The notes beneath the pieces are model-generated. The model was given only the letters and a program-made list of their open reading frames with translations. It did no database searches and had not been told where the DNA came from. Positions 25,201-63,860 of a stretch of 64,000 nucleotides of DNA are shown in pieces. Location: contig NC_068991.1 in NCBI RefSeq assembly GCF_001194135.2, positions 23,060,694 to 23,124,693 of the forward strand. The letters are read 5' to 3'. The DNA is from Octopus bimaculoides. Its lineage: Eukaryota. Within the stretch, counting starts at the first letter, position 1; each line of letters begins with the position of its first letter. The position numbers and the translations under genes were made by a program.

Positions 25201-28200
25201 GACTGGGGACTGGTGAACCAGATGGCTGCACCAGACTCCAATCTGATCTGGCAGAGTTTCTACAGTTGAATGCCCTTCCTAACGCCAACTACTCTGAGAG
25301 TGTAGTGGGTGCTTTTTACGTGCCACCAGCACGAGGGCCAGTCCAGCAGTACTGGCAACGGTGATGCTCAAATGGTGTTTTTTACGTGCCACCTGCACAG
25401 GAGTCAGTCCAATGTTTTGTTCACATGCCACCAGCACAAGTGCCAGTAAGGCAAAGCTGGAAATGATCGCGCTCAATGGTGCTTTTTACGTGCCACCGGC
25501 ACGAAAGCGAGACTATTGCTCTGGCAGTGATGCCGCTCAGATGGTGCTGTTATTGCTCCACTGGCACGGGTGCCAGTCATTGAATTCGAATTTTATATAT
25601 ATATGAAATTGAGTGATAAACAGTACAAATATGTTCACATCATTGGATCGTACAGAACAGGTGTTAGTTGTGCTGTGACAGAAATGCAAATGAAACCATT
25701 TTATTTTATAGAAAATGTTTCCAATTTCTACTGTGATTTGAACCATAAGTCTCCAACATTATGTTAACATCAGGAAGGCGGCAAGATGGCAGAAACGTAA
25801 GCACACCAGACAAAATGCTTAGTGGTATTTCGTCCATCATTGCGTTCTGAGTTCAAATTCTGCTGAGGTTGACTTTGCCTTTCATCCTTTAGGGGTTGAT
25901 AAACTAAGTACCAGTTGCGTACTGGAGTCGATCTAATTGACTGGCCCCCTCCCCAGAAATTTTGGGCCTTGTGCCTAGAGTAGAAAAGAACATCAGCTAT
26001 GGGTTCCTATGAGAAGTTTTGGTTAGCATTATTCATGGAATTCCTTAAAACAACCTTCTAATTCACTTCCAACTTCTGCAACCTTTAAGATACAATTTAT
26101 AAAATAGTCTGCTTTGAAAAACTTTTAAGCTTTCAATCACATACTCGAAACACTTTTTACCCACTACAAGGCCTCTAAATTAGTACACAAAGTACCCTTC
26201 TTTGACAATTCACAAAAACAATGAAATAGCGACAGAATATGAAAGAGGAATTTACCTTGGGTTGGTGAATGCCGGTGTTGTTTCCGTATGACATAGAGAA
26301 TAGGTTCTTGGACATGGAGCAACTCATATTCCAACCCAGTCATTGAGCTGCAATGGAAAAAAATTACAGAAATTGGTGGGTAAAGAGGGTAAAATTATTA
26401 CAAAATAAAAAAAAAAAAATTTGAAGGGGAACTAATATCCCAGATTTAACAATTTAAATTATAAATTGACACGAAATGCAATTGGTGGTGAGCCCCATCA
26501 TCCATCAGATTATAAGATCCTTTTTAGTATTTCTTTAGGATCAGAAAATATCTTAACCCACCTCAGTTGTTGAAACCCTAACATCTTCTAAGATTTGAAG
26601 TGATCAAGTGATTTGTAGATAGGAGAAACAACAATATCACTCACCACACTTTCATACAAACAACTACAGATGTAGACAAATATATAGACATGCGCGTGCA
26701 CATACACAAAAACTTAAAATGAGTCTTCTCTCAGTTTTTGTCCAACAAATCCACTCATCAGGCTTTGGCTAGTCTGTGACTATAGAAGATACTTGCCTAA
26801 GGTGCAAACTTCTCAATCATACTACCATTATGCTTTCTTATTATTCACTTCTATGGCAAGGCAAACTGGACAAATGCTAGGAACAGTGTGATATGAACTT
26901 TGGCAAAAAGTCTAATACTTACCAATGTAGTCAGTTGAGTGTTTAAAAAGGTTATGCCTTTGAAAAATACAGGCTAGTTATAGGGACAGCTAGAGAAGGG
27001 GATGTTCTCTCTCTCTCTCACAAACACACACAGATAAAGTATAAAATCCATCTATAATGATAATTTAGGTTACAACTCACCTCAATTGCTCTGGGTTTAG
27101 GTGCTGCATTTTTACATTCTCATTGTTGCATGTTCGATCATAGAATGGATTAGTTCGTTCAGAAAAATAATCCAATACATTGGAGGAGTTTAACATGGGT
27201 ATCCATGCACTGTTTTGCCAGGAGATTCCAAGAGATTCTGAGGAAATTGAAAAAGTAAAGTTCTAATAAGTTTAAGAGAGTGAAATTTATAACATGTCTT
27301 TGTATGTGTGTGTGTATGTGTATTAGTTTGGTTGCTATTAAAGCTAGAGAAGTTTGAGGTTTTTCCTCCTTTCTCATGATATGTTTATTCTATAATGCTT
27401 TCAACATCAATTTAAAACAGACTATTCTATACATATACTTCATTTGATTAGATTTGAATTAAGAACCATTATTCATAAGGATTCAGTACTATTTATCCAC
27501 TATGGTACAGCTGATAAGGAATAAGAAGAGAGTCAATAAGTCAATACAGTACTAGACAACCAGCCTGAGGTCATTAGTACTGCATTGTCTATTGTAACAA
27601 TACTTAATCTCAAATGGCTAGCTATAAATAAATACTTCAGCATACAGACAAGTATTTTGTTAACACTAAAATTAAGGCATCTATATCAAACTGGTGAGCA
27701 AGGGTTTCATAACACATCAGCTCACCATTCACATATAATAGCAAACTGAATCCCTGAATCAGTTTCTTTAAGCTTTGAAACTACTGGCTAAAGAATGTAA
27801 CTTTAAAGTAGTGTCAATAATAGGTGTTTTTATTTCTGGAATAATGAAAGACTCCGACTACTCTAGAATAAAATGCTAGATTTGGAAACAGCGGTTCCGC
27901 AAGACAGTGCCTTGGATTACAGATAAACAAAGCCAGTATTTACAATCTAAATGCTACAGGAAGACACTGAACTGGAACTTATTTCCCATTCTCAGTATCA
28001 TCTCTTACCAATTTATTTTCTATTGAGCACCCCTTTCTCCTAAACACCTTCGCATATCTGCCTTCAAAGTCTCCTCCATCTTCATTCATCACATTTTCCA
28101 CCTCTAGATTCCTCTGATCAGTGACCTCCATCTCTGTCACTGTGCAGCCCTCTCTCACCTATTGCCCCACACTTCACAGCATCTCCTTATTTCTGATGTT

Positions 28201-30370
28201 ACTCCACTTCCTACCTTTCTTTAGTAGTGTTACTCATCTCCTCTTCCCCCTCCTTGACCCAGTCCTATTTCTTTCACCTTAACAGCATAGTCATCATTGA
28301 CTGCATTCACCTGTATCTCCATCTCTAACTATTTATTATTCTCCTATCCACCTAACCATTCAGAGCCTCTGTCTATATTCTTTCTTATATTCACCTTGTA
28401 CATTAAGGGTGTGCCCTAATATATCATCACCATCATCTCGTTTCTCTCTCTTCAGCTGGGATAGCCATGTACCTCCTCTACAGCAAGACACTTGTTTCTG
28501 TCCGTCTATCATACTTCACAAGACTTCTCAAGGTAACCTCACCAGTGCCAGTCTTGCTTGGATAAAGTAAGACCCTTAATGAAATATATTACTTTTCCAA
28601 TATTTCAAGAAATTGTTACTGCCTTCAAAAGTATTAAAGTCAACATAGAAAATACTTACCCCCATGCTCTTGACAACTCTATCCCATTTACAGTTGAAAC
28701 CAATACATCAGACACTGCTCTAGCTGCAACATTAACACTGAGAGGTCACCTTTTTCTCACACTCTAAAACTGAATTGTTGTATCCTTCTATTGAGAAGGA
28801 ATCTGTCACAATTGTCAAGAAAATTAAGTATGGTAACACTACCTCCTGAGATCTCACTCTCATTAACAAAACATTCAATTTATGTTTGATAAATTCTATA
28901 AATCCACAAATTAATGTGCTGGACTACTGAACTTTCTCTGGACATTCTTTTTTATTAATGAGGAAAATAGAATGTATTCTTGCTTTTGTTGACGTGGTCG
29001 TGCAACATGCTACAAATAGTTACCAAATCTCCCTTGAATAACACCTTATCTTAAAGGGCGGATACAAATACAAAATGGTCAAGGCTGCAATGCCTCTAAT
29101 CACCAGTTTTATTCACTATATATATATTTAAGCTTGGTTAAGTTCACAATCACATAATCGCATACATCATACCACATTGGACTAATGTCCTGTTTTTTTT
29201 AGTGAATTCGGTAGACGGAAACTGCGTGGATCCCAACCGTGCGTGAGTTTGTTTTTCACCACTTTCTCACGGCTTTACAAACGGGTCTCGGTCTGTGTGC
29301 CCGTAACTTAGCAGTTCGGCAAAAAGGCCAATAAAATAAGTATTGAGGCCCATTTGATCAACTAAAACATTCCAAGTAGTGCCCCAGCATAGCAGCAGTC
29401 AAAAGACTGTGATAATATATATATATATATACTCTTTACTCTTTTACTTGTTTCAGTCATTTGACTGCGGCCATGCTGGAGCACCGCCTTTAGTCGAGAT
29501 AATCGGCCCCAGGACTTATTCTTTGTAAGCCTAGTACTTATTCTATCGGTCTCTTTTTGCCGAACCGCTAAGTTACGGGGACGTAAACACACCAGCATCA
29601 GTTGTCAAGCGATGGTGGGGGGACAAACACACATACATATATATATATACGACGGGCTTCTTTCAGTTTCCGTCTACCAAATCCACTCACAAGGCTTTGG
29701 TCGGCCCGAGGCTATAGTAGAAGACACTTGCCCAAGGTGCCACGCAGTGGGACTGAACCCGGAACCATGTGGTTGGTAAGCGAGCTACTAACCACACAAT
29801 TTGCTTCAATTTTTTCATAGCAGTTTATTAATACCATGTCGAGCACTAATGTCACATTGTGACATAAAAACATTAAATGCGATATTCTGGAGAAGTCGAC
29901 CAAATATGACTCACTGTGGCACAAGATCGTCAGGTTTGAAACTGTCAGACAAGAATGTAAATAACGATAAATTGAGACATTGGAAGAGATAATTCGATGT
30001 TTCCAACTGAATGGTTTGAAACCGGATTGCAAAATCAGTTTTTTTAATTCCCTTTGTAAGAGAAGGATATGATGTGCTGATATTTATGCTTTTGGTAAAG
30101 AATTTTCTTTCTTTCTTTTTTAGGACTTAGGTGAAACAATTCCAACAAACGACCGAAACAGTCAGACTCCGTGACAGTAAATATTTCCGGTATGTTTACA
30201 TCTCTTTTTCATATATATCAATTCACAAATTAGAATTAATTAAACGTACGATATTAAAAGCACAATATCGTAGATACACTGAAAAACAAATGGAGGCTAA
30301 ATTAAAGCAACTAACACAGATTTTGTAAAAAAAATAGAGTTAAACAAGATAACTAACCTTTCTCAGCCAT
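16235..30370 (-). CDS. MED6: Mediator of RNA polymerase II transcription subunit 6, 8 coding exons, 234 aa
   Basis: Exons in transcript order: 30370-30358, 27237-27081, 26347-26256, 23162-23080, 22254-22215, 20023-19955, 18898-18758, 16344-16235. GT..AG introns, phases consistent, 705 nt. Contains LGISW...[63 protein letters not shown]. The 13-nt first coding exon (MAEK) is the least certain. Confidence 0.94.
17446..18492 (-). mobile_element. Decayed mariner transposon (Hsmar2/irritans-like) in MED6 intron 7
   Basis: TIRs CGAGGGGTGTTCATTAAAGATTTTTCCTGACCCACTT and its near reverse complement ending 18492, with TA on both sides. Transposase fragments on the minus strand: [33 protein letters not shown]. 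Frameshifted, with an internal deletion in the N-terminal DNA-binding region. Confidence 0.92.
24130..24650 (-). mobile_element. RTE-clade LINE RT C-terminal remnant
   Basis: Minus-strand [23 protein letters not shown]...FRGLLPL-like translation. Confidence 0.7.
24655..25580. repeat. Tail-to-tail inverted pair of a retroelement 3' region with ~65-nt subrepeats
   Basis: Plus copy 24655-25123 and minus copy 25141-25580 meet at an (AT)n spacer, and both end in (GAT)n. A third plus copy lies at ~54760-55150. Confidence 0.85.
28570..28900 (+). mobile_element. Gypsy-type RNase H remnant in MED6 intron 1
   Basis: AFKSIK...[24 protein letters not shown] resembles the RT/RNase H region of Ty3/Gypsy pol. 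Confidence 0.55.
29432..29797 (-). mobile_element. tRNA-derived SINE family A, near full length
   Basis: Head with A/B-box-like TGTGTGGTT...GGTTCAGTCCC, an internal microsatellite, and a tail ending GACTGAAACAAGTAAAAGAGT. Other copies at ~13195-13520 (+), 19318-19510 (+), 21170-21340 (-), 26690-26815 (-), 29205-29410 (+), 44605-44935 (+), 46990-47150 (-), 54170-54345 (-). Confidence 0.85.
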
Positions 30371-31208: not shown

Positions 31209-32517
31209 TGGAGGGCTTTTCTTCTCTCTTAGAAACCACACTAGAAATTGAATTGGATTGCAGCCTAGGGAGTTAAGCATCTAAATCGACTTCGACTTTC
31301 TCAATTATATATTAAACAATTACTACCCACATTTTGTTGCTAGTAACTAAATGAAGTATTTAAAATATATTTCGGCCTTATTTGAAAGTGCTTGTGTCAT
31401 GGGGAAATTATGTAAGAATTCGTTCGTTTTGCCACTGAGGGTAAAGGGGTGTTTGTGAGCTAAAAAGGAGCTTCTGTGCGATTGTTTCACCTATTAAAAA
31501 TATCAACTAAATCATAACCTACTTACATTGGATGATGTGGCCTTAGGTACATTACTGTGAAAGAAAAGACAATACCTTCTTAACCAGGGCTGCCCTGGAC
31601 TTACCGACGACAGTGAGGTTTGTGCTCGAGCGACTTGTCGATCATATCTAACCAAACTCTTTACTGCCCTTCTGCTTTTGTTTACTTTTGGTTCTCAACC
31701 TGGGTTCATATGACCCTTGGGGGTCCACGCAAGCAAAATAGTAAATTGGGGATCCATAGTAATATTTTATGGGTTCATGAAAACGTTTTGCTTTGCATGT
31801 ATTTATTGGAAGAAACAGCTAGATTTCTTTCTCTAACATTTTACATAGTTCAGCCTACACAAGTTAGTGTGTAAAAAACAAAATAGAAATTTTGAAAGAT
31901 GTATTTATAAAGTTAGTTTTTAAACAACGAATGGCTTTGAGGATCCACCAGAATAAAATAGTAATAGAAGGGGGGATGGGCATAGATAAAAAAAAAATAG
32001 AACCATCGTCCTAGACTTCATCAGGACATTAAGCTTCCAGTTACAGAAGCTACATTGCAAACTGATCTAGTTTTTTTTTTATGCTCCATGTATTAAAAGT
32101 TAGCATTCACTGTTAACTGTGTTACTTCGAGCCAGACCTGCTAGAAATTGCAACGAAATATTCGTAATACACTCTACAGTTGTAAACAGATTCAGTGTCC
32201 AATAAAAAAAGATGGGATGGACATGGCTGGCTCAGTAAATTCTGATCTGGGGCTAAACTTCGATATTTCATTATAACCCTCACCGTTACCGCTTCAGTTT
32301 CTCAATCAAATTGAACTTTTGTTCTTTTACTTGTTTCAGTCATTTGATTGCAGTCATGCTGGAGCACCGCCTTTAATCGAACAAATCGTCCCCAGGATTT
32401 ATTTTTTGTAAGCCTAGTACTTATTCTATCGGTCTCTTTTGTCGAACCGCTAGCTTACAGGGACGTAAACACGCCAACATCGGTGTCAAGCGATGGTAGG
32501 GTAACAAACACAGACAC

Positions 32518-32553
<36 letters not shown>

Positions 32554-35500
32554 GACGGGCTTCTTTCAGTTTCCGTCTACCAAATCCACTCAAGATTTTT
32601 ATCGGCCCGACATTTGCCCATGGTGCCACGCAGTGGGACTGNNNNNNNNNNGTTGGGAAGCAAGCTTCTTACCACACAGCCACTCCTGCGCTACCTAAGT
32701 TAATTCTTTTTCTTGAGATTTTAAAAATTGTCGAGTAAATTAAATTTTTTTTTTTTTTTTTTTCTTCAGAAAGTCTAATTTTTCATGCGTAAACATTTTT
32801 AAAATATATATTTTAAGTTTCGTATTGCGTAGTCAATTTCTTTTCACTTTCATTTTAAACATCTAAAACCTTGGGCCAACTTGTTATCCTCGTTTCAAGG
32901 CTGTAGAGCCATGAGAAAAACGAGTTACACATTCAATAGTGTAGATGGATTGTCATGGCTTTTCATCAAATGTGTCTTCGTACAGGACTACACATCATCT
33001 AAACTTTCCTGCTCTACCCCTTTGACTATAATCTTGTAAATTCTCGCTTTGCTTACTCATCCTCTCACTATTCCGATTTGACTTCATCTTTGTTAGTTCT
33101 TTTGATGTTTTCATGTTAGGTATTTTATTCTTCTGAAAATGAACGTCGCAAATATGTGTTGCTAGGCCACCGAACGCCCGTCCCTCGTCTGGGAGCTCCT
33201 GGTCAGTTCTAACAGCACAGAGTAGAAAACTGATTTGTGTAAGACAATCTCTAGTGCTGCTGGTCATCGTAGTATTTACTTAATTTTGTGGTGGCCTCTA
33301 ACAGGACCATTCAACATGAGAGAAATAACAACCAAATCCCCCTCAAATCAATTTACTGCATTTTAGAAAAGAATGGGAAGGCTTGAAGTGTCGTCGTACA
33401 TGTTTGATATCAGACGTACTCAATCAGGGTTGACCTGATGCTAAAATAACAATTCTACTATTTGGGTCTTGGTTGTTTTTAATATGGTTCCCTCTGTTGC
33501 AAACATTCAGACCAGCTTCCTCCACCTTCCAGTTTGAAGTTTAATCTTGACCTTCCCTTGTAGAGTAACCATTGTTTCTGTGAAGGTACAAGTGTTAACG
33601 ATTTCCATATGAAAGTCCCCTGTGAGTTAAACCCAAGGCATAGAACTCTTGGGAGGCTTCTCTATCAACTGTTGCATCCCATTCTGTAACTGGTGCCCAT
33701 CTGTTGTCACTGAATTTCAGCTAAACTTCTTACAAAGATTCATGTGGAGAGAGATGCTTTCCTCTTACCTTTCTTCCACCAAAACAGGCAAGGTAGAAGT
33801 CTATAAAAGATCAGTGTCAGCCTGCTGGACACTGCCCTTTTCTACATCTGAAGGCTTTATTATACCCGTTGGCTCTTTACATACACCATATTGCTGATCT
33901 TAACAACCTACTACTAACATATATCATATTCTGCTCTGAAGCACAGTTCTCATCTTCAGTATTTAACTTTCCACTGTCTTGACTACACTATATTTTGACT
34001 TCATTTTGAAAGATGATGTCAGTGTATATAGAATCCATTCTCTCCATCACTTACATTGATATTAGCCACATAGACTTCCGGTTACTCTGGTTCAAAACCT
34101 CTCTGAAAGTGTTCCAGCCATCACCACCAATTAATTGACTGTTTCATCCTGCATCGAGAACATCTGTATTATTTTACCTTTCTCTGAAGTCATCCTTTTT
34201 ACTAACTGTAATAACACAATTCTGCACTGACATAGAGACTAAATCACTTGCTATTCTAAACCTTATCATTTATCAGTATCCTTTGCCAACATTCCAAATG
34301 CCCTTGACCTCTTTTTTCACTTAGCCAGTACTGCACCCGTCATATCATTTGACCATTTCTAATCAAAGCGACAAAGCTCAAGTCTTCCTCCTTCACAGTG
34401 CTTTTCTGCTTCCCAATTCTGGTAATTGAAGTTAGCAAACTGGTCAGAGCCCTACCAGTTTTAGGTTGACCACCCATGATGCAAAATGTAATTAATCCCT
34501 GATTCTTTTGTGAGAGATAAGCAAGTTACTGAAGACTTCTACATAGGTGCTTCCTTTCCACATTCCTACACTGCACTGTAGAAGTACAGTCAAAGAATAC
34601 TAAGTACAAGATCTACAAAAAGTCACTCACAACAGGGATTGTTTACCCGCTACTGCAATACCACAAATGACCATCAAGAGATTAAAAGAGACTTTTGTGT
34701 ATTTTACACCTGAGTCTTTTGGCTTTTGCTAAATGAGTTTCTACTAACTTTGCACAACCTTCTGCCTTCTCCTTCCCAACCAATATGTTTCTAAGCAGCT
34801 CTCCTGCTGATAAAAACCACCAAATCTGCTTTCCATTTTACTGTTTCTATAATATACCACCCACACATAACGAAATTCTTCACACTCTTTTTTTTTTTCT
34901 TCTCTGCCTATCTCATCACCATATTCATACAGTTTCCAAGTTCCTCTGTTTGTTCCAAAACAATACTGGTCCTGACATTTGTGTCTTCCATACTCTCCAA
35001 CAGTGCACTTCAGAAGTAGCTCTTGTCATTAGACTCTTCAATCTTTTTCCCTGCATGGATATATCACTAAACCTGCTAGAAGTAGCAGCCAAATCTCTCA
35101 AATCACACCGTACTGTTTTTCATAACCAGAAGGATACATTAGCACATTAAATAATGTCTTGTATACCCCCCTCCAAAAAAATGTGCCATTCAAAATTGGA
35201 AAGGTCTTCTCAGTCAGTGTTGATCTGGGGTTAAACAATTACACATTTTGACCATTATATAGTGTCAACACTCCATCATGCTCAAAGTGTGTTCTGGTTA
35301 AAAAAATTGAAGTACTCTTTACTTGTTTCAGTCATTTGACTGCGGCCATGCTGGGGCACCGCCTTTAGTCGAGCAACTCGACCCCAGGACTTATTCTTTG
35401 TAAGCCTAGTACTTATTCTATCGGTCTCTTTTTGCTAAACCGCCAAGTTACGGGGACGCAAACACACCAGAATTGGTCNNNNNNNNNNNNNNNNNNNNNN

Positions 35501-38474
35501 NNNNNNNNNNNNNNNNNNNNNNNNNNNNNNNNNNNNNNNNNNCAAACATAGACACACAAACATATACACATATATACATATACATATATACGACGGGCTT
35601 CTTTCATTTTCCGTCTACCAAATCCACTCACAAGGCTTTGGTTGGCCCGAGGCTATAGTAGAAGACACTTGCCCAAGGTGTCACGCAGTGGGCCTGAACC
35701 CAGAACCATGTGGTTGGTAAGCAAGCTACTTACCACACAACCACTCCTAAATACTATTTTTTTTTTTCCATCCTTTCCTTCATTTCACTGTCTGCTTACT
35801 GACTACCTGTTCAGTGTGATGACTATTTCTCTCTTTTTCTTTCTCTCCCTTATTCTCAGTATGGCCACTGCATGATAAGAACAGGTAAACCAGCAAAGAA
35901 AGAACACCTGATGTGGCACCTTAAATAGCTACTGTTGTTTTGTTCCATGTTAGCTCTGATCAAGCAGTGCTTTGATCAAAGTATTTCAGCCAAGACCTTC
36001 CCATTTTATTTTCAAGCAGTATCCACAGTTACTTCATTTAATGTGTTCTTTCCTAAGATGGTAGAAACGATTTGGTTGCTATTTCTAGCTGGTTGAGCAG
36101 TCATGCAGAGATTCCCTGAAATTATTAAAATTTTCTTTTCTTATTGCAGACTTTGCTATTTAACTTGTATTTTATGATACAGACTTTGCTGTTTAACATT
36201 GTCCACTGTCAGTAGAGATTTTATTTCTGAATTTGCGCATTACACAGCTAACAACAGTAATACCATATTCTCTCTCTTTTTATTTTCTCTTATTCCTTTT
36301 CTGTTGAAGAGTGTCAGATTGAAATGTAAAAAAACTTTTTCATTTTCCTGAGCGTCAAACTAATACACCTGCTTGTTGTTCATATACCTGTCTTCGTCTT
36401 TTGTTTTTCTATAAATTTCAACTATATATATATATACACACACACATATATATATATATACACACACACACATATATATAACATTTGATCACTTGTTTTC
36501 TGTATTCAAAATTTGGACAGAACTCATAGGACAACCTGATACAGACAAATGTGTTGTCAATGATCTTTAAACACTATATGGGATATTTTCATCGTATCAA
36601 GAGTTGCAAGCCTAGTTTGACAGTTGAGTTTTAGTCATTAAGTGAGAAGTACTGGCTGCGATTGAATAGAAAACATTTAGAATGTATGCAAATGCTATGC
36701 CTCTTGTGGATGTAGCTATTAAAGCAAAGCCTATAATTTAGTTAATGGTCACCAGACAAGCCAAAACAGAATAGTTTAGTCAAGTGCTGACTATTTGTAA
36801 AAAAATGTTAGCAAAGCACTTACAGCACAAACAATTGCCATTTGACTTACTGAACTGTGACAAAAGCTGTAAGTGTTTTTGTAACTTGAATGCTATTTTA
36901 TGGAAGTAATGTGTTGTCAAACCAGGTCTGCAACTCAAGTATGATGGAAATACTCCATACATGATGTCCTTATGCATTGTCTATATACTTTAGACACTGT
37001 GTATGTATGTGTATCCATGTATATAGATGTGTGTGTAAATAGTTTGCATATCTTGTAAGCTGTATACAGTAATATACTGGGATTTTTTGCAGTTTATGTA
37101 AGAAACGTTTTTCACAGACATGAAGAATATAAAATCTTACCCAAACAGTATCTACAATAGATTTAGTGATAGTGATCCAAGAATCAGTTGTATTTATCTT
37201 CCCTTTACTCTCCTGAGCATTAGCATCAAGCCTGAAAAAAAAAGCCATACAGCTGCACCCACTCCACTATACTCTGAACCAGTGTAGAAGCACATACATG
37301 ATCACTTGACCTGTTAGAAATAGCAACCAAATTTTCATGAACACTTTATTACTAAACTTAAAAAAGGAAGGGCACTTTAATTAATGTAGTCCTGGAAACA
37401 TGCTGAGGTCCCCTTCGGTCATGACTGACCATGGGATTGCACCTAGAAAGTTACCTTCCCAGGCACAAGTCCGGGCAAGGTTGTTTATGGAAGACCAGCA
37501 GTTGCCCATGCATACCGGCCTCCCCTCTCCATGCCTCCAGTGTTATCCAAGGGAAAGGCAAAGGCCGATACAGCTTGGTACCTGTGACGTCGCAACTCAT
37601 TTCTACAGCTGAGTGAACTGGAGCAACGTGAAATAAAGTGTCTTGCTCAAGAACACAGCATGCAGCCCGGTCCGGGATTCAAACTCACAACCTCATGATT
37701 GTAAGCTCAACGTTCTAACCACTGAGCGAGGTGCTTTCACATACCTGGAAACATGTCTATATAAAAGGCAAGATGGTCATGATTGAAATACTTTGGCTTG
37801 GTCAGTACAAACATGAGTCCGTCTAAAGAACAACAACCATACTTCTTACATTGACTGTTTTTTAAATTATATACACATATGTACAATGTGATATATGTAT
37901 ATATACATACACTGTTCTCATCCTCATATGTAAATGTTTTTTTTTCCCTCTCATTGTAGTCTCACACCATTATGTTAATTCAACCTAATCCGAAACCAGA
38001 AACTCGAACTTATTCAGATTATGAATCCCTGACTGATTGCCTTGAAGGTTTGTATATTGCAATATTTTATCTCTTTAGGTTCCAAATTTGAATCCTACCA
38101 ACGTAGATTTTGTTCTTCATCCTTCTTGAGTTGATAAAATAAGTATCTGTGAAATACCGAGTTCAATTTAATCAACTGTTTTTCTCCCTCATCCTCAAAT
38201 TGTGGTCTTGTGCTTATGTTAGAATTTAGTATTGATTTCAAATTGTGGCACAAGACCAGCAATTTCAGGGGTGGGGGTTTAGTCAATTACATTGATTCCA
38301 GTGCTCAACTGGTACTTATTTTATCGACCTCAAAAGGATGAAAGGCAATATCAGCTTATGTCTTCACAAACATTTGATCACTATAAACAAATCATCTGTG
38401 TGGTTGTTCGGTAAGAAAGTGTTGAACTCTCACACATCGTCTAACGACAGGGGATTCCTTCATATGTGTGTGTT

Positions 38475-38505
<31 letters not shown>

Positions 38506-38777
38506 NNNNNNNNNNNNNNNNNNNNNNNNNNNNNNNNNNNNNNNNNNNNNNNNNNNNNNNNNNNNNNNNNNNNNNNNNNNNNNNNNNNNNNNNNNNNNNN
38601 NNNNNNNNNNNNNNNNNNNNNNNNNNNNNNNNNNNNNNNNNNNNNNNNNNNNNNNNNNNNNNNNNNNNNNNNNNNNNNNNNNNNNNNNNNNNNNNNNNNN
38701 NNNNNNNNNNNNNNNNNNNNNNNNNNNNNNNNNNNNNNNNNNNNNNNNNNNNNNNNNNNNNNNNNNNNNNNNNNNNN

Positions 38778-43677: not shown

Positions 43678-43919
43678 TCACACGTGTGTGTGTGTNNNNN
43701 NNNNNTGTGTGTGTGTGTGTGTGTATGTATGTATATATATATATATATATATATATTCACACGTGTGTGTGTGTTTATAAATACTTTTCTGGCAGAGAAA
43801 TAGATTGAGGTTGTGAGGGTATGTAACAATTATTAAGCTAAGGCTAGTTACAGCCAATAAACTAGCAAATAACTTCTGCCTGTGTACCACAGCAAGGACT
43901 GGCAGATAAATAAACCATT

Positions 43920-55629: not shown

Positions 55630-56900
55630 TTGAGGTGGGAACAAGACTCTTGGAGTTCTGTGATACAAATGACCAAATCATCTGCAACAATAACTTCAAG
55701 AAACCTGCCAGTACCTGATCAATCTGGTGAGCACACAAGCCAGATTGACTACTTTCTCACAAGAAAGCAGGAGGGGCAGATGGTTGTAAATGCAAAGTCC
55801 TTCTCCCGTGAAGAATGTTCTACTCAACGTAGGTTAGTAGTTAGAACTGGAAGAACTTAGAGACACAAGCCAGTCTGGAAAAGAGATATATGGAAGCTTA
55901 AAGAGCAATTGAACAGTCAGAGATTTAGAGAAGTCCTAACTGAAGCATCTGATGAGCAGGAGGAAGAGGACCTATAACATACAGGAAAACTTACTGAGGG
56001 CAGGCAACAGATACCTTAGAGAGGAGTAATTACAGAATATCAAGTTGCTGGATCAGGTCACGAAAGTTACGGAAGGATTCAGATGAGAGTTAGACTAGAT
56101 GAGATGCAGTTTGGCTTTATACCAAGAAGTACTACTGATGCCCTCTTTCTAGTAAAGCAGAAGTACTTAGCCAAAAATGAACTGTTGTATTTGGCTTTGG
56201 TTGACCTAGAGCCTTTTACAAGATACCTTACACTCTAGCCTGATGGTTGCAGTGGAAGCTAAGAGTAGACAAATGGTTGGTAAGAGTCATTCAAGCTATG
56301 TACTGAGGTGCCGTCAGTATGAGAGTTAGCACTGAGTACAGCAATGAATTTAGTGTACAAGTAGGAGTTCACCAGAACTCAGCTCTCTGTCCCTTCTTAA
56401 TTATCACAGTTCTCCTGGTTATAAAAGAGGATTTTAAGACCAGTTGCCCATAGTCTCTTTTGTACTGAGAGCCTTGTTCTTATAGTGAAATCTGTAACAA
56501 AATTAAGAAAGAAATTGTAGGTGTAGAAGCAAAACCTGGAACCAACAGTCCTTAAAGTTAACTTAGCAAAAACCAAAATTCTTATTTCTTTATTGCCCAC
56601 AAGGGGCTAAACACAGAGGGGACAAACAAGGACAGACAAAGGTATTAAGTCGATTACATCGTCTCCAGTGCGTAACTGGTACTTAATTTATCGACCCCGA
56701 AAGGATGAAAGGCAAAGTCGACCTCGGCGGAATTTGAACTCAGAACGTAACGGCAGACGAAATACCGCTAAGCATTTCGTCTGGCGTGCTAATGTTTCTG
56801 CCAGCTCGCAAAAACCAAAATTCTGGTAAGCAAGAAAACAGGCAGCATGCCTTCAGTAATTGCAGGTTTTAGTTGCTGATATTCAATGAGAAAGTAGAGT
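55630..56900 (+). mobile_element. RTE-clade LINE ORF2 remnant interrupted by a SINE
   Basis: SQIDYFLTRK, DEMQFGF, STTDALFLV, LVDLE and GVHQ-like fragments. Confidence 0.8.
56583..56807 (-). mobile_element. Young SINE family B with perfect target-site duplication
   Basis: Flanked by GCAAAAACCAAAATTCT at 56566-56582 and 56808-56824. Older copies at ~5720-5850, 9060-9270, 23425-23610, 25775-25990, 38085-38350 and several at 53140-53700. Confidence 0.9.
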
Positions 56901-58189
56901 GGTAGGGTGAGTTAAATCTATATATGCATAGACACCACCTTTCAGAGTGAAGTTTAACCGGTTTAACCGGTTACTCCCAAACTTATTGATAGCATAAATG
57001 GAGGAAGATTTCTGTATCAGAGAAGTAGATGTGTGGTTTGTGTACTAGGTTGTATCAGAGTCATGGATAGTGGAGAAAAAGAAAGAGAACTGTCTTGTCA
57101 TCTAGAATTATTTTTTGCCATGACAGGAAGCATAGAGAGTGCCAGCGTATCGTGAATTCACATTAACCTCAGTTGAAAGCCTGGTCTGAATGCTTGCAAA
57201 TGACTGAACTTTGCTAAAGGCATCCAAGGGCCAAGTGGGTATAGTAAACCAGACAGTATGATGCAGCTACCAACAGGGATATATAAAAATTAAAAAAAAG
57301 GAACCTGCTGTGCTAAATGCAACTTCGTTGGTTCATAAGTCTGAAACATGATGTGTATGTGGTAAATAGGAGTAAAAACCTAGACCTAACATTATTTTCA
57401 TAAATTGTTTGATTGAAAATATTCCATACTTATTAGTAGATGCAAAATAATAAATAATAGCTAATGACTAAACATTTCGAATATATACCAGCTGACACCA
57501 TAAGCTGATTACATAACTCAAGTATGTCACATAACTCAAGTATTACACCATAAGGCCAAATACCATTCATTACAAGTTACAGTGACTACTAACTACAGTA
57601 AAACCATTTATATTGAATTATTTCAGTTCTCAAAGACTGTAAATTTAATTGTAGAAATACCTAAAGAAAACTAAAATAACTGTAATAGAAAAATAAGCCC
57701 AACTTTCAATGGCTTAAATTTTGGTGTCTAAAAGAGGATGGCATTGAGAAAATTAATGGGTTAACCGGTTACTCCCAAACTTATTTTTATTTACTCTACA
57801 ATGCATTGTGAATAAAACATTATACAACACTATATAAATAAATATACCAAAAAGAAATCTATACTTTGACCTATATATGAATAATTCAATATTTATTTTA
57901 TTACTCAATAACTGAAGCAGTTATCAAGACTAAATAGAATTTCAGTTTGTATTTTTCACATTATGTTCTCTATTAGGTTTTATTTAAAAACCATATTACT
58001 TCATAGAAGAATGTTATATTACATCTCTCAGCAAGATATAAACAGTAGCAGTACGGAACTGTAACATATATTGGCCAACTAAGTGTGGCATCCTATACAG
58101 GACAGTGCTACTGATGTTTATAGCCCCAGGAAAACATCTCCTCCAGTTGGCTAATGACACATTCTGTCTGATTAGTATTTGCCTTATGT

Positions 58190-58240
58190 GATATGCTCAG
58201 ACTTGAGTTTCTGGGTGGTTACTCGTCCTCAGTGTGTTAA
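58190..58240 (-). ncRNA. Degenerate hammerhead motif, unit 1
   Basis: Minus strand: ACACA CUGAGGA CGAGU AACC ACCCA GAAAC UCAA GUC UGAGC. Core intact; stem I and the palindrome are disrupted. Confidence 0.65.
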
Positions 58241-58526
58241 TCATCAGTTAGTGATGGAAGCTCATTCTGCTCACAAATTACTATATATTTTTCTAGCGAC
58301 TCACTGTCGCTGATCTCGTAGTAGAGAGAATGTTATATTAAATCTCTGAGTGAAATATAAACAGTAGCTGCATGGAACCATAACATATATTTGCCAACTA
58401 AGTGTGGTGCCTTTACAGGACAGTGCTACTGATGTTTATAGCCCCAGCTGGCTAACGACACACATTCTGTGTCCGATTAGTATTTGCAAGGGGAGGTTAT
58501 CACTCCCATCTCTAGCCTTATGTGAT

Positions 58527-58573
58527 ACACATGGACTCGAGTTTCTGGGTGGTTACCCATTCTCAGCATGTGT
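58527..58573 (-). ncRNA. Minimal type I hammerhead ribozyme motif, unit 2 (G8A core variant)
   Basis: Minus strand: ACACAUG CUGAGAA UGGGU AACC ACCCA GAAAC UCGA GUC CAUGUGU. Perfect 7-bp stem I, 5-bp stem II, palindromic loop 3, GUC cleavage triplet. Confidence 0.85.
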
Positions 58574-58882
58574 TAATCATCAGCTAGTGATAGAAGCTCA
58601 TTCCACTCGCAAATTACTATATATTTTTCTAGTGACTCACTATTACTGATCTCGTACAAGAGAGAGAATGTTATATCAAATCTCTGAGTGAGATCTAAAC
58701 AGTAGCAGTATGGAACCATAACATATATTTGCCAACTAAGTGTGGCATCCTATACAGGACAGTGCTACTGAGGTTTATAGCCCCAGGAAGACATGTCCTC
58801 CAGCTGGCTAACGACACACATTTTATGTCTGATTCATATTTGCAAGGGGAGGTCATCGCTCCCATCTCTAGCCTTATGTGAT

Positions 58883-58929
58883 ACACACAGACTCGAGTTT
58901 CTGGGTGGTTACCTGTCCTCAGCATGTGT
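58883..58929 (-). ncRNA. Minimal type I hammerhead ribozyme motif, unit 3 (intact core, weakened stem II)
   Basis: Minus strand: ACACAUG CUGAGGA CAGGU AACC ACCCA GAAAC UCGA GUC UGUGUGU. Stem I has two G-U pairs; stem II has two mismatches at its base. Confidence 0.82.
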
Positions 58930-59059
58930 TAAACACCAGCCAGTGATAGAAGCTCATTCCACTCGCAAATTACAATATATATTTTTCTAGCAACTCACTG
59001 TCACTGATCTTGTAGAAGAGAATGTTATAATAAATCTCTGAGCAAGTAGCTGGTGATTA

Positions 59060-59106
59060 ACACACGCTGAAGACAGGTAACCACCCAGAAACTCAAGCCT
59101 GTGTGT
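59060..59106 (+). ncRNA. Degenerate hammerhead motif, inverted unit
   Basis: Plus strand: ACACACG CUGAAGA CAGGU AACC ACCCA GAAAC UCAA GCC UGUGUGU. Cleavage triplet changed to GCC. Confidence 0.7.
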
Positions 59107-59409
59107 ATCACATTAGGCTAGAGATGGGAGTGATGACCTCCCCTTGCAAATACTAATTGGACACAATGTGTGTCATTAGTTAACTGGAGGAGATGTCTTC
59201 CTGGGGGTATGAACATCAGTAGCACTGTCCTGTATAGGATGGCACACTTAGTTGGTAAATATATGTTACGGTTCTGTACTGCTACTGTTTACATCTCGCT
59301 CAGAGATTTGATATAACATTCTCTCTCTTCTACGAGATCAGTGACAGTGAGTCGCTAGAAAAATATATAGTAATTTGCAAGTGGAATAAACTTCCATCAC
59401 AAGCTGGTA

Positions 59410-60790
59410 ATTGTTGGATTTTTTCAGCTGCTGCCTTCGTGAGTTCATTTTGCAGTAATTCTAATGTTATGCTTCTACTGTTTGTGCTTTATTCCATTGA
59501 ATTGTTGTTGAACCTGTGAAGTTTGAACCTCGGTTGTTTTGTTAACAGTTGTTTTCACCCTGCAGGGCAGAAAGTTCTGTTATGTTGGAGAACTGCGAAC
59601 TTTGATTTTTGCCCTTTTACAGGGTAAAAATTGTTCTGTTTAAAAATTATTTTTTGTAAAAGACAATTTTTTGGCAAAAAGTTTGTCAATTTTTGAAAAC
59701 ACTTTTTGAAAATTTGTGTGCTGTTAAAGGAATTTTGTATTTAATATGGAATTTTGGACTTCCCAGAGGGCAAAAAGGAAGGTGCAAAACAGGTTCAGAA
59801 GGAAAGACCCAGTTTTTCAGCTGCCATTGGCAGCAAGCAATATGGTGAATTTGAATGTATCTGTCGCAGAATTATTTAAATACTGGAATATGATTAAGAA
59901 ATCAGGGAGTGATACGAAGTTGCTCCCTCCTTAAGATATACTACAGAATATAGCTGCCAAGACTGTGGTCTATAAAACGTACAGTCTTAAGGAGAAAAAA
60001 TGTCTGTCAAAAATGAAGTAATTCAGAAATGCATGCAACCCATCTGGAATAAAACAAAAAATGTCAGAGGCAGTATAAGAAGCGCTACAGTGGAGGTACA
60101 ATTCACTGATGAGAGTACAGCAAAAGAACTGTTGACATTAACACTGAGAAATGATGAAATAATTCTCCAGCCAACTTATCTAGGCAAGAGAATGGTGAAA
60201 ATTAAAGTGAAGGAGATTCCGGTTGGTTTGGATGTGTTGTGGTTTGCAGCAGCCATAACATACGACATGGAAGAAAAAAAAACGTCAATACTACAAATAC
60301 AGAAAAAAGGAAAGGCCACTGCCTTGAAATGGTGGTCCAAGCCAGCCCCGAAATCCTTGAAGGACTTCCCGATAGGGTGTTCATAGGGAAGGAGCTGAGC
60401 ATAAGAGTGAGTGTTGAAGGACGTAGGCCACGCTATTTTAAGTGCGGTGAAAAAGGTCACGTCTGCTCAGAATGTAAAGAAAAAAAGTGCAAAGCCCCTC
60501 TTCAACAAAAATCTAAAGATACAGAAGGAAAAGGAAAGCAACCAAAAAACAAGCAGAAGTGCCCAAGGAAAGCGAACCAATAAGGCAAGAAACACCAACC
60601 ACAAAAGAAGAAATAGGATTTACATTAGTGAAATTTCAAAAAAAGAGAAAAGGCCTCAGTCCCAGACTCCCCTCCCCATACAGAAACACCTAAAGCAACC
60701 GCAGACATACAGGAAAAATCTCCTTACACCATCCCCCTGTTAAAACCCATCTCCAAACCCCACCCCAAAATACAATACAAAATTGTATCA
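59410..60790 (+). mobile_element. Decayed non-LTR retrotransposon 5' end with gag-like ORF1 (Tx1/L1-like)
   Basis: ORF pieces 59746-59934, 60000-60386 and 60239-60583 join through a stop and frameshifts. They include RRM-like ATVEVQF..., KIKVKEIP and a degenerate zinc knuckle RPRYFKCGEKGHVCSEC. No ORF2 follows. Confidence 0.65.
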
Positions 60791-61389: not shown

Positions 61390-63330
61390 CTGGCAGAATG
61401 TTGAACATTGTGGACCCTTGAAATCCAAGCAGTTACAGTACTGGGGCCTAATTCTAGATGGAGAAGACAGGATCTTTGATACTACGCAGTGTTGTCTAGT
61501 TCAATGGTTGATATAGCTGCCAATTCCAATTTGGGAGCTAAACTTTCCAGGATCTTCCACATGTATATCACTGCATATTTCCTATGCCTTTTCTCTAGAG
61601 AGTAGCACTTCAGTTCTTTAGCCTTTCCCAATAGCTCATCTGTTTCACCAAGTCAATTTTCTTTGAGTAGTGGCACTGGATTGTCTCAAATTCTGCCACC
61701 AGTTCGATGCTCTGCAGTGACCACAGTTGGGAGCAGTGATCCAGATGACTGAGAATGAAAATTCTCCATAGGAGCAGCATGGCATCCTTTATCCTAGTTG
61801 TGAATGACCTCAGAACCCATCCAACTACTCAATCTAAGTATGGAATGTTGCATCATTACTCATGTGAATTCCCAGGTCACTGACTGACTGACTCTGGGAT
61901 TGCACTACCTCTGGTCATGCATGCCAGTTTCATCAGCCCATTTGTACATCGCATTCAGGTCATTTTGCAGTTTTAATATGTCATCAGGGTTCTTGATAGC
62001 TTATGAAAGTGTCTGAGAGAGCCATCACAAACAGTAATGGTCCCAGCACAGTTCCTAGAAGAACTCTGCAGTGAAATGATGTCTTCCCAGAGAGAGCACC
62101 ACTGGCTGCAACTGTCTGACTTCTGCCTTTCAAAAAGTCATGCAGCCACTCACCCAGTTTTCCAGTGATACAAAAGTCACGCAGTTTGTGACATATCTCA
62201 TGATTAACTTTGTCGAAGGCTTTGCCATAGTCAAGATATATCACATATACATTTGAGTAGCTGAGCTGCTGGGTCAGTACCCAGTCATAATGCTGTAGTA
62301 GCTGTGTGAAGCAGCTCCTCCCTGAACAAAAGCCATGTTGTGTGTTTGCGAACAAGTTATTTTCTTCCAGAAATGTGATCGGAGATCTTCTGACAATGCA
62401 CTTCATGACCTTGCTAACATGAAGTCAGAGAAGCCTGAAATTTTTAGCATCTGCTCTTCTTTTAACAGTTTGGGAAGTTTACCGCATGCAAAAAAAAACT
62501 CTGCAAAAGTATCTGCAGTAGTTTCGCAAGAGCTTTCTTGCATGTTTGACATCCATCTGGGCCCACTGCTGAGTTTGAATTCATCTCCTCAATGGTTGAT
62601 ATTGCAACTTCTTTTATGTTGATGAAATCAATGGTTGGCTCTTTTCCAGGTAAATCTGCAGTGTTAAAAAAGTTATCAGGCTTGCTTATTTGCAGGCTCC
62701 CCAGCAGATAGGTGAAGACACTTTGGAATTGTTTATTTAGCACTTCACCTGTCCTCCTGTAGTTAAAGAGCCTTCTGCAAACAGTGACTCTATCTTGTAG
62801 AGCACCAAGGCAGATTCTCTCTCAAACATACAGAAAGCTTTAAAGATTCATTTCTATATTTTCCACTGTCCTGGTTTTTCTTTCTACTCTTTAATTTTCA
62901 TGGGAGAGTTTGAGTTTATTTTCAATATCTAAAAGTGCCTTTTTGAGGAGATATTTCTTGCTGTCATTAAGTTACTTGTTTAAGCATTTGGAGATCTTTA
63001 TTCTCTTCATCTCATAAGCACTTTCCTGTTTTGTATGTAATGACTCTCTGGAACAAATTTAATGTATATGGATCACATTATTGACATAAATTCATTAAGT
63101 TTCATATCAATGGCTTCCATAGAGAGACTTTTAAGCCAATTTTGCTAGAGTATCTGTTTTTCAATTGACTGTCAGTCAGCGTTGCAAAAGTTCAAACTGG
63201 ATAGGGTTTGGGTGCTATCTGTTTAGAATACATCATTAATTAGTTTTGGACCATACATCAGTTCTGCTATGTTGTAGTCCAAGAAGATTGTTGGTGATAT
63301 CTTCATATTGTGGATAAGTTCTACATTGCT
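61390..63330 (-). mobile_element. CR1/Jockey-group LINE reverse transcriptase remnant
   Basis: QHGFCSGRSCFTQLL, VIYLDYGKAFDKVNH, WLHDFLKGRSQTV, LGTVLGPLLF; many stops and frameshifts. Confidence 0.9.
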
Positions 63331-63860
63331 GGTGAAGCAGAGTTTTAATATGTTATTGTTTCTGGTTGGGAAGAATATGGTTTGCTGCATGAACAGCATT
63401 TTTGTGAGATCAAGTGAAGATCATACTCGATTGTGCGANNNNNNNNNNNNNNNNNNNNNNNNNNNNNNNNNNNNNNNNNNNNNNNNNNNNNNNNNNNNNN
63501 NNNNNNNNNNNNNNNNNNNNNNNNNNNNNNNNNNNNNNTATATATATATATACATGCATACAGTCCTGGATTTACCATTATGCTTAGGGATGCATAAGCA
63601 CAGGGCCCTGTTGACCAGGGAGCCCATCTTTCTGCCCCCCAAATTTTTTACGGTGACCTTTTCAAATGTCAACATTCCCTGGGCCCTGATAATTCAAAAA
63701 TTTGACTAAGACTGGTTTAAAAAAAAAAAATAATGATTTATCCGGTAACACAATATTTTAACTACTACTAAATTTCTTGAGCATGTATGCCTGACTGTCC
63801 AAGTAAGGGGCCTCATTTGCTCTAAGTCCAATGCTGCATGCACATATATACATACATACA

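What the first reader, a model, noticed from the sequence alone, without database searches (positions are those of the whole stretch)
58008..59412. Retrozyme-like tandem array: each ~350-nt unit carries a minimal type I hammerhead ribozyme
Seen: 319, 338 and 354-nt direct units plus an inverted unit, each containing stem I - CUGANGA - stem II (YGGGU/AACC/ACCCR) - GAAAC - UCGA - GUC - stem I'. The rest of the unit also looks self-complementary (CAGTAGCA...TGCTACTG, GGGAG...CTCCC, CCT-ATAC-AGG) and has no convincing coding ORF. Established: non-coding tandem units of this size with minimal type I hammerheads define metazoan non-LTR retrozymes and hammerhead satellites, described in schistosomes, newts, corals and mussels, where multimeric transcripts self-cleave to monomers and circular RNAs. 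Inference: this is a cephalopod retrozyme family. I cannot tell whether it has been described.
Basis: partly seen in the sequence, partly recalled or inferred. Interest (0 to 1): 0.9.

Follow-up and report, generated by a model that had tools for sequence, protein, structure and literature searches.

The report
Decayed hammerhead-ribozyme tandem repeat (retrozyme relic)
This 1.4-kb stretch is an old, mutated insertion of a known kind of small mobile repeat ("retrozyme") whose ~350-base units once carried a self-cutting hammerhead RNA; it adds a new family to a known class and is unlikely to be active at this locus.

Summary
The repeat is real. Three direct units start 319, 338 and 354 bp apart (58008-59018), followed by a 28-bp stub and one inverted unit (59047-59412). 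It is the only copy in the window. Each unit has a type I hammerhead-like motif, on the minus strand in the direct units and the plus strand in the inverted one. The architecture matches published invertebrate retrozymes. A motif of this quality gave 0-1 hits in 40 Mb of random sequence.

Every copy has at least one disabling lesion, none passes a strict descriptor, and Rfam Hammerhead_1 scores 14.7-19.1 bits against a threshold of 34. Units are 86-90% identical. The ribozyme is no better conserved than the rest, and six copies show no stem covariation. This is a neutrally decaying relic.

Diverged relatives (66-82% identity) turned up in three Logan-assembled sequencing runs of another organism. 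Two carry decayed hammerheads. One is a ~177-bp satellite that has lost the ribozyme.

The head-to-head inverted unit matches Penelope-like element insertion architecture and recurs in one of those loci. I could not verify cephalopod origin. Verdict: a new member of a known kind, of moderate to low interest.

The parts
58008..58326 (-). Repeat unit 1 (319 bp). Hammerhead sense is on the minus strand. It carries a 29-nt deletion that removes the GGGAG...CTCCC hairpin.
58327..58664 (-). Repeat unit 2 (338 bp). It carries a 17-nt deletion that removes the GGAGGA...UCUUCC hairpin.
58665..59018 (-). Repeat unit 3 (354 bp), the most complete direct unit.
59019..59046 (-). 28-bp start of a fourth direct unit. 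In hammerhead sense it is the 5'-truncated end of the minus-strand array, and it abuts the inverted copy.
   Evidence: (D7)
59047..59412 (+). Inverted unit of about 1.03 units, with hammerhead sense on the plus strand. Its 5' end abuts the 5' end of the minus-strand array (head-to-head).
   Evidence: (I1-I5)
58883..58929 (-). Hammerhead copy A. The core CUGAGGA / GAAAC / GUC is intact. Stem I is 7 bp, including 2 G-U pairs. Helix II is reduced to 3 bp (CAGGU/ACCCA). The predicted cut is after C at 58890.
58527..58573 (-). Hammerhead copy B. All three stems are perfect, but the core reads CUGAGAA (G8 changed to A). The predicted cut is after 58534.
58193..58237 (-). Hammerhead copy C. The core is intact. 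Stem I is broken by a 2-nt deletion plus substitutions, helix II is CGAGU/ACCCA, and loop 3 is UCAA. The predicted cut is after 58200.
59060..59106 (+). Hammerhead copy D. CUGAAGA is intact, but GUC has become GCC (U16.1 lost) and loop 3 is UCAA. The equivalent cut site is after 59099.
58575..59412 (.). Long inverted repeat formed by the direct and inverted units. If transcribed through, it folds into a hairpin with a stem of about 370 bp.
   Evidence: I1, I4; -593 kcal/mol, z -56. This hairpin also explains the spurious MIR matches.

Best explanation
The locus is a relic insertion of a metazoan non-LTR retrozyme.

How the family works when active (established for the class in PMC7229834, inferred for this family):
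- Tandem ~350-nt units are transcribed as multimers.
- A type I hammerhead cuts after GUC. It has an open helix I of 7 bp, a helix II of 4-5 bp capped by AACC, and a helix III of only 2 bp capped by the palindromic tetraloop UCGA.
- The weak helix III is stabilised when two ribozymes pair through the 8-nt palindrome ACUCGAGU, forming a double hammerhead.
- The monomers are circularised by a host RNA ligase.
- The circles are copied by a retroelement reverse transcriptase into tandem cDNA, which integrates.

At this locus, 3.1 units in one orientation plus 1.0 unit head-to-head were inserted, most simply in one event. They have since diverged neutrally by about 6% each. Every ribozyme copy now carries a disabling change, so the locus is probably catalytically dead.

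The head-to-head junction is the arrangement typical of Penelope-like element (PLE) insertions. That points to PLE machinery as the mobiliser.
For: Shown:
- The array anatomy is as described.
- The hammerhead motif is far beyond chance: 0 hits for the consensus form and 1 hit for the relaxed copy-A form in 40 Mb of random sequence, both strands.
- The majority consensus passes the descriptor once the closing pair of helix II is skipped.
- The lesions are private to single copies, and variants at 10.1/10.2 are CG, TG and CA, the signature of CpG decay.
- Units are 86-90% identical in every pairing, including the inverted unit (a star-like pattern). Transitions outnumber transversions by about 4 to 1.
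- The sense monomer folds better than shuffles (z -4.4 and -2.1), whereas the antisense does not (z -0.8).
- The ACUCGAGU self-duplex is -10.7 kcal/mol.
- Helix III has the same design as the mussel construct, GAAAC-GCGC-GUC.
- Unit size, GC of 41%, lack of LTR, PBS, PPT and ORF all fit the published definition.
- Diverged relatives exist in another organism's sequencing runs. L003 and L005 have the hammerhead remnant at the same place in the unit.

Inferred:
- PLE involvement. Tandem copies plus an adjacent inverted 5'-truncated copy is the PLE insertion pattern (PMC8557442). The same head-to-head arrangement recurs in L003.
- Retrozymes have been proposed to derive from PLEs (PMC7229834 discussion).
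Against: - No copy passes a strict hammerhead descriptor.
- Rfam Hammerhead_1 reaches only 14.7-19.1 bits against a threshold of 34.
- All six known copies have C opposite A at the closing pair of helix II (10.1/11.1), where natural hammerheads nearly always have G-C. Even the ancestral ribozyme may therefore have been weak. The published precedent is the U-U mismatch in the axolotl family.
- There is no stem covariation.
- The ribozyme region is not more conserved than the rest within the array: 13 of 53 columns vary, against 60 of 299 elsewhere.
- No target-site duplication was found.
- No PLE gene appears among the window ORFs scanned.
- A related satellite (L004) amplifies without any hammerhead, so the ribozyme is dispensable for DNA-level expansion.
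- No expression or circular-RNA data could be examined.
Confidence: 0.75

Rival explanations
1. This is an ordinary satellite or segmental tandem duplication expanded at the DNA level by unequal crossing-over or replication slippage. The hammerhead is only an inherited passenger, with no role in how the array arose.
For: - L004 shows five tandem ~177-bp units that correspond to unit positions 58-218 with the ribozyme deleted, so the sequence can expand without it.
- The ribozyme is not preferentially conserved here.
- No target-site duplication was found.
Against: - The star-like equal divergence of all units, including the inverted one, fits one insertion better than stepwise duplication.
- Unequal crossing-over does not produce the head-to-head inverted unit, which recurs in L003.
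- The loci are dispersed with different flanks.
- The unit boundaries, size and hammerhead fit the retrozyme definition.
Confidence: 0.12
2. These are remnants of the pseudo-LTRs of an autonomous Penelope-like element, not a separate non-autonomous retrozyme.
For: - The tandem plus inverted 5'-truncated architecture is typical of PLEs.
- PLE pseudo-LTRs carry hammerheads.
- The odd nucleotide at the 5' end of helix II recalls the unpaired nucleotide described for PLE minimal hammerheads.
Against: - No RT/GIY-YIG ORF lies between or beside the units. The only RT nearby is a fragment matching RVT_1 on the other strand, 2.6 kb away.
- Three or more consecutive units have no coding insert.
- The hammerhead has the canonical architecture (helix I 7 bp, helix II 4-5 bp, helix III plus a palindromic loop). 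It is not the PLE minimal type, which has a 7-8 bp helix II and no helix III.
Confidence: 0.08
3. The locus functions as a hairpin-RNA or small-RNA source, because the direct and inverted units form a stem of about 370 bp. On this reading the hammerhead is irrelevant.
For: - The predicted hairpin is -593 kcal/mol with z -56.
- Rfam long-hairpin miRNA precursor models match at 48-72 bits.
Against: - Those matches are all below the gathering scores of 110-140 and come from plant-type long-hairpin models, so they reflect the inverted repeat alone.
- The arms are diverging at the same rate as the other units.
- No expression data are available.
Confidence: 0.05

Closest known systems
Mussel (Mytilus galloprovincialis) non-LTR retrozyme, construct Mg353 (Cervera & de la Pena 2020, PMC7229834)
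   Same: - Tandem non-coding units of 350-390 bp, compared with 319-356 bp here.
- A type I hammerhead with an open helix I.
- Helix III of 2 bp capped by a palindromic tetraloop: GAAAC-GCGC-GUC there, GAAAC-UCGA-GUC here.
- Low GC.
- A self-paired monomer.
   Different: - There is no sequence similarity outside the core.
- The mussel helix II begins G-C (GUCU...GAC). This family has C opposite A at that pair, and its loop 2 is AACC.
- The mussel family has about 5000 copies with demonstrated self-cleavage and circular RNA. Nothing is demonstrated here, and the copies are decayed.
Axolotl retrozyme hammerheads (construct Ax353; HHR_Amex families) and newt satellite 2 hammerheads
   Same: - They act as dimers because helix III is minimal with a palindromic loop.
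- One axolotl hammerhead family carries a mismatch (U-U) at the base of helix II, a precedent for the C-A pair here.
   Different: - They are vertebrate families with very high copy number.
- The helix III length differs (1 bp in HHR_Amex1).
- The sequences are unrelated.
Penelope-like elements (PLEs) and their pseudo-LTR hammerheads (PMC4209133, PMC8557442)
   Same: - Partial tandems with an inverted 5'-truncated copy abutting the 5' end.
- Type I hammerheads that need dimerisation.
- PLEs have been proposed as the source and mobiliser of animal retrozymes.
   Different: - There is no RT-endonuclease ORF here.
- PLE hammerheads are the minimal type (long helix II, no helix III). This one is the canonical type.
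Rfam RF00163 Hammerhead_1
   Same: Copy A aligns to the model end to end over all 45 positions: core, helix I and helix III. Copy B also matches the full length, but the model places its core on an upstream CUGAUGA box with a 31-nt insert, not on the CUGAGAA core.
   Different: Scores are 14.7 and 19.1 bits against a gathering score of 34. The match is not reported at all when the whole window or the 1.8-kb region is searched.

Membership tests
Metazoan non-LTR retrozyme (Cervera & de la Pena 2020) | Each unit carries a type I hammerhead: CUGANGA / GAAA / UH core, closed helices II and III, open helix I. | tested here: inconclusive
   The motif is present in all four units in the right order and register. 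The majority consensus passes a descriptor only if the C-A closing pair of helix II is skipped. Of the actual copies, A and C keep the core. B has G8 changed to A, and D has lost U16.1. None passes the strict descriptor.
Metazoan non-LTR retrozyme (Cervera & de la Pena 2020) | Short tandem repeats of about 150-450 bp in multiple copies. | tested here: met
   There are 3.1 direct units spaced 319, 338 and 354 bp apart, plus 1.0 inverted unit. Tandem Repeats Finder at default settings missed the array.
Metazoan non-LTR retrozyme (Cervera & de la Pena 2020) | Non-coding, with no LTR, PBS or PPT, and GC below 50%. | tested here: met
   The longest ORF is 81 aa. A 76-aa ORF found nothing by word-indexed search. 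By HMMER its only related matches (P0101, P0102, P0105) are translated copies of the same repeat; P0103 proved unrelated at the DNA level and P0104 was not followed up. GC is 40-41.5%. No terminal repeats other than the units themselves were found. PBS and PPT were not searched for explicitly.
Metazoan non-LTR retrozyme (Cervera & de la Pena 2020) | Target-site duplications longer than 4 bp, when present. | tested here: not met
   Only a 5-nt chance-level match was found between 46-nt stretches spanning the two array edges, 57965-58010 and 59405-59450. The published definition says 'when present', and the locus is old.
Metazoan non-LTR retrozyme (Cervera & de la Pena 2020) | The monomer RNA is predicted to be stable and highly self-paired. 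| tested here: met
   Sense monomers fold at -111.5 kcal/mol (z -4.36) and -85.4 kcal/mol (z -2.09). The antisense gives z -0.78. The ends pair through helix I and a long-range helix.
Metazoan non-LTR retrozyme (Cervera & de la Pena 2020) | Expressed as monomeric linear and circular RNA, with self-cleavage shown. | not testable with these tools
   No transcriptome of the source organism is available and no experiment is possible.
Metazoan non-LTR retrozyme (Cervera & de la Pena 2020) | Co-occurrence with autonomous PLEs in the same genome. | not testable with these tools
   Only 64 kb is available. Ten of the 37 ORFs of 90 aa or more were scanned: one is a mariner fragment, one an RVT_1 fragment, and eight have no Pfam family.
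Rfam RF00163 Hammerhead_1 | Bit score at or above the curated gathering score of 34. | tested here: not met
   Scores are 14.7 bits (copy A) and 19.1 bits (copy B region) in 96-nt slices. There is nothing at window scale.
Penelope-like element (pseudo-LTR with minimal hammerhead) | An RT plus GIY-YIG ORF flanked by the repeats, and a minimal hammerhead (helix II of 7-8 bp, no helix III). | tested here: not met
   There is no ORF between the units. Helix II is 4-5 bp, and helix III with its loop is present. Only the tandem plus inverted insertion architecture is shared.

The most novel reading that the evidence does not exclude
The most novel reading not excluded has three parts.
- The source genome holds an undescribed, still active retrozyme family whose hammerhead naturally carries a C-A pair at 10.1/11.1.
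- Its insertions systematically show the PLE-type head-to-head junction, seen here and in L003. That would be direct structural evidence that PLE machinery integrates retrozyme cDNA.
- The family has repeatedly given rise to ribozyme-less satellites such as L004, documenting a retrozyme-to-satellite transition.

If the host is a cephalopod, it would be the first retrozyme family I could find reported there. My literature searches found no paper linking retrozymes or hammerheads to cephalopods beyond a PLE survey.
Probability: 0.3. Interest if true: 0.5.

Novelty: new member of a known kind. Interest (0 to 1): 0.35.

Why it matters
Hammerhead-bearing tandem repeats are a known and widespread class of animal mobile elements that make abundant circular RNAs. 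What mobilises them is still debated.

This locus adds a new sequence family. It also carries two small pieces of evidence bearing on that debate:
- The head-to-head inverted unit is typical of Penelope-like element insertions, and it is seen in two independent loci.
- A related satellite has lost the ribozyme.

The locus also shows that decayed retrozymes escape the usual detection route. Tandem Repeats Finder, a hammerhead descriptor and the Rfam threshold all missed this one.

The locus itself is most likely inert.

Tried and rejected
- **Exact-pattern scans.** I scanned metagenome, viral and prokaryote genome collections for the hammerhead block and for the most conserved 19-mer of the unit. 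All gave 0 hits.
- **Word-indexed protein search.** A search with a 76-aa ORF of the unit found nothing. The exhaustive HMMER search with the same ORF did find translated relatives.
- **Weak HMMER hits.** P0103/L006 is unrelated at the DNA level and was dropped. P0104 (E 1.7e-05) was not followed up.
- **Organism identification.**
  - The nearby RT fragment and the WDR92 exon returned only unnamed metagenome and Logan proteins.
  - Literature searches for the SRR run numbers gave nothing relevant.
- **Rfam miRNA precursor matches** (MIR6217, MIR7996, MIR4208) were rejected as artefacts of the long inverted repeat. All are below their gathering scores.
- **Alternative hammerhead register.** The register using the upstream CUGAUGA box, chosen by cmscan in copy B, was rejected. 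It requires a 31-nt helix II insert, and that box is mutated to CUGGUG in copies A and D.
- **Bacterial promoter and terminator scan.** Uninformative for a eukaryotic locus.
- **LINE 5'-UTR monomers.** I considered that the units might be 5'-UTR monomers of the adjacent gag-like ORF (60000-60743). I rejected this because three of the four units face away from it, and the related loci have unrelated flanks.
Full report
**1. What is in the sequence**

The repeat finder places direct unit starts at 58008, 58327, 58665 and 59019, giving spacings of 319, 338 and 354. The fourth unit is only a 28-bp stub.

From 59047 to 59412 the same unit runs in the opposite orientation. Its arms are 87-90% complementary to the direct units (I1-I5).

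A BLAST of two units against the whole window finds no other copy. Tandem Repeats Finder at default settings reports nothing, probably because the units differ by 17-nt and 29-nt deletions.

The window is 35% GC with a CpG observed/expected ratio of 0.30. It contains the first coding exon of a WDR92 homologue (PDB 3i2n, E 8e-26). It is therefore a methylated metazoan nuclear region. I could not determine the species.

**2. The hammerhead motif**

The motif lies on the minus strand of the direct units and on the plus strand of the inverted unit. I cut the array at the putative cleavage sites: after 58890, 58534 and 58200 on the minus strand, and after 59099 on the plus strand. This gives monomers of 356 and 334 nt plus partial units.

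The four motifs, written stem I 5' strand / core / helix II 5' strand, loop 2 and helix II 3' strand / core with helix III and its loop / stem I 3' strand:

| Copy | Sequence |
|---|---|
| A | ACACAUG CUGAGGA CAGGU AACC ACCCA GAAAC UCGA GUC UGUGUGU |
| B | ACACAUG CUGAGAA UGGGU AACC ACCCA GAAAC UCGA GUC CAUGUGU |
| C | ACACA-- CUGAGGA CGAGU AACC ACCCA GAAAC UCAA GUC UGAGCAU |
| D | ACACACG CUGAAGA CAGGU AACC ACCCA GAAAC UCAA GCC UGUGUGU |

- Helices II and III are closed by loops and helix I is open, so the topology is type I.
- Helix III is 2 bp with the palindromic loop UCGA. This makes ACUCGAGU an 8-nt palindrome with a self-duplex energy of -10.7 kcal/mol.
- That is the design described for canonical metazoan hammerheads, which work as dimers (PMC4209133). 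It is also the design of the published mussel retrozyme construct, GAAAC-GCGC-GUC.

**3. Is it more than chance?**

A loose pattern (CUGANGA...GAAA...GUH) is not significant: 4 matches against 2 expected.

A descriptor that also requires the three helices is rare. In 40 Mb of composition-matched random sequence, both strands, it found:
- 0 hits at the quality of the majority consensus;
- 1 hit at the relaxed quality met by copy A.

The expected number in a 64-kb window is 0.002 or less. The hammerhead ancestry is therefore not in doubt.

**4. State of the copies**

- No present copy passes the strict descriptor.
- Copy A has only 3 bp in helix II.
- Copy B has G8 changed to A in the catalytic core.
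- Copy C has lost stem I.
- Copy D has lost U16.1.
- C and D have also lost the helix III palindrome (UCGA changed to UCAA, duplex -1.6 kcal/mol).
- Rfam finds no hammerhead at its gathering threshold or at E<=10 in 1.8 kb. In 96-nt slices, Hammerhead_1 scores 14.7 and 19.1 bits against a threshold of 34.

Units are 86-90% identical in every pairing, including the inverted unit. Transitions outnumber transversions by about 4 to 1. This star-like pattern fits one insertion of near-identical units followed by neutral decay.

Within the array, the hammerhead region varies in 13 of 53 columns, against 60 of 299 for the rest. There is no sign of selection on the ribozyme at this locus.

**5. The ancestral ribozyme**

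- The lesions are private to single copies, so the majority consensus restores the core and helices I and III.
- At positions 10.1/10.2 the copies read CA, UG, CG and CA, the pattern left by decay of a CpG. The ancestor was probably CGGGU.
- The 3' strand of helix II is ACCCA in all four copies and in both diverged relatives.
- The closing pair of helix II is therefore C opposite A as a family trait, not a local mutation.
- This is unusual for a hammerhead. A U-U mismatch at the same place is reported for an abundant axolotl retrozyme family.
- Whether the ancestral motif cleaved efficiently is open.

**6. The rest of the unit**

- The hammerhead-sense monomers fold better than shuffled controls (z -4.36 and -2.09). 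The antisense strand does not (z -0.78).
- The alignment fold pairs the monomer ends through helix I and a long-range helix.
- Covariation is too sparse to prove anything: 2 compensated pairs out of 97.
- The 17-nt and 29-nt deletions each remove one hairpin exactly.

**7. Relatives elsewhere**

Exact-pattern scans of the public DNA collections and a word-indexed protein search found nothing.

An exhaustive HMMER search with the 76-aa ORF that overlaps the hammerhead found translated copies of the repeat. Their contigs could be fetched from Logan assemblies of runs SRR11869390, SRR11869391 and SRR11869394. They are 66-82% identical to the unit.

| Locus | What it carries |
|---|---|
| L005 | CUGAGGA CAGGU GACC ACCCA AAAAC UUGG GUA at the homologous place |
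| L003 | CUGACGA ... ACCCA followed by an A-run and a (UG)n expansion |
| L004 | Five tandem ~177-bp units equal to monomer positions 58-218, with the ribozyme segment deleted |

The contigs have CpG o/e of 0.6-1.0, so they come from another species. They still share SINE-like interspersed repeats with the window, so that species is probably related.

Across the six hammerhead copies, 77% of cells pair in the proposed structure. That is well above slid registers, but there is no compensatory change and no excess over shuffles.

**8. Insertion architecture**

In hammerhead sense, the 5' end of the minus-strand array (59046) abuts the 5' end of the plus-strand unit (59047). Both are 5'-truncated at different unit positions.

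This is the arrangement described for Penelope-like elements: partial tandems with an adjacent inverted 5'-truncated copy (PMC8557442).

L003 shows the same head-to-head arrangement, with an antisense part at 157-275 and a sense part at 320-662.

The 3' ends fall at different unit positions in different loci: about 225 and 312 here, and about 80 in L003. That fits a circular or multimeric template better than a linear RNA with a fixed 3' end. This last point is inference.

Retrozymes have been proposed to be mobilised by PLEs (PMC7229834) and to derive from them (bioRxiv 10.64898/2026.07.22.740005).

No PLE gene is visible in the window. The neighbours are a decayed gag-like ORF, an RVT_1 fragment on the other strand and, further away, a mariner fragment.

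**9. By-product**

The direct and inverted units can form a hairpin with a stem of about 370 bp (-593 kcal/mol, z -56). This explains the sub-threshold matches to long-hairpin miRNA precursor families. It could yield double-stranded RNA if transcribed. There is no evidence that this is a function.

**10. Verdict**

- The hammerhead ancestry is secure, and the class assignment (metazoan non-LTR retrozyme) is well supported.
- This particular array is a decayed relic.
- The class has been known for years, so this is a new member of a known kind.
- Literature searches found no report of retrozymes or hammerheads in cephalopods beyond a PLE survey. However, I could not verify that the window is from a cephalopod.

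Noticed in passing
window 3290-3466 (+): This is the first coding exon of a WDR92 (DNAAF10) homologue. It matches residues 5-62 of human WDR92 (PDB 3i2n, E 8e-26) and is up to 85% identical to unnamed eukaryotic ORFs in metagenome and Logan assemblies. The repeat array lies about 55 kb downstream on the same strand, possibly in an intron.
   Followed up: partly
window 17844-18323 (-): A mariner/Mos1-type transposase fragment (Pfam Transposase_1 at E 6e-20, HTH_48 at E 2.5e-06).
   Followed up: partly
window 60000-60743 (+) and 61984-62743 (-): Just right of the array are three overlapping frameshifted ORFs with a CCHC zinc-knuckle-like motif (gag-like, no Pfam hit). Next comes a reverse-transcriptase fragment on the opposite strand (RVT_1 at E 1e-10). 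By eye the RT resembles a LINE type, but I did not test that. It is 68% identical to a protein on ENA metagenome scaffold L001.
   Followed up: partly
window 56586-56764, 25826-25942, 23447-23536, 9119-9220; L004 2153-2331: A SINE-like interspersed repeat occurs at four places in the window and matches the 3' end of Logan contig L004 at 72-77% identity. This suggests the L004 organism is related to the window's organism.
   Followed up: no
window 29415-29515, 32318-32395, 35318-35390; L001 1-102; L003 17-46: A second short interspersed repeat is shared with an ENA metagenome scaffold (L001) at 83-86% identity and with L003 at about 91% over 32 nt.
   Followed up: no
L004 1090-2000: This is a tandem array of five ~177-bp units homologous to positions 58-218 of the retrozyme unit, with the hammerhead and its flanks deleted. 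It is a ribozyme-less satellite derived from the same family, found in another organism.
   Followed up: partly
window 582-1450, 32642-32651, 35479-35542, 38506-38777, 43696-43705, 63439-63538: Assembly gaps (runs of N). At least four of the six (582-1450, 38506-38777, 43696-43705, 63439-63538) sit inside (TA)n/(TG)n-type microsatellites, seen as [10 protein letters not shown] runs in the ORF translations.
   Followed up: no
window 58115-58145 and 58180-58200 equivalents (units 1 and 2): The two length differences between units (17 nt and 29 nt) each remove one predicted hairpin exactly. This is reminiscent of the typical 20-nt indel reported for coral retrozymes.
   Followed up: partly
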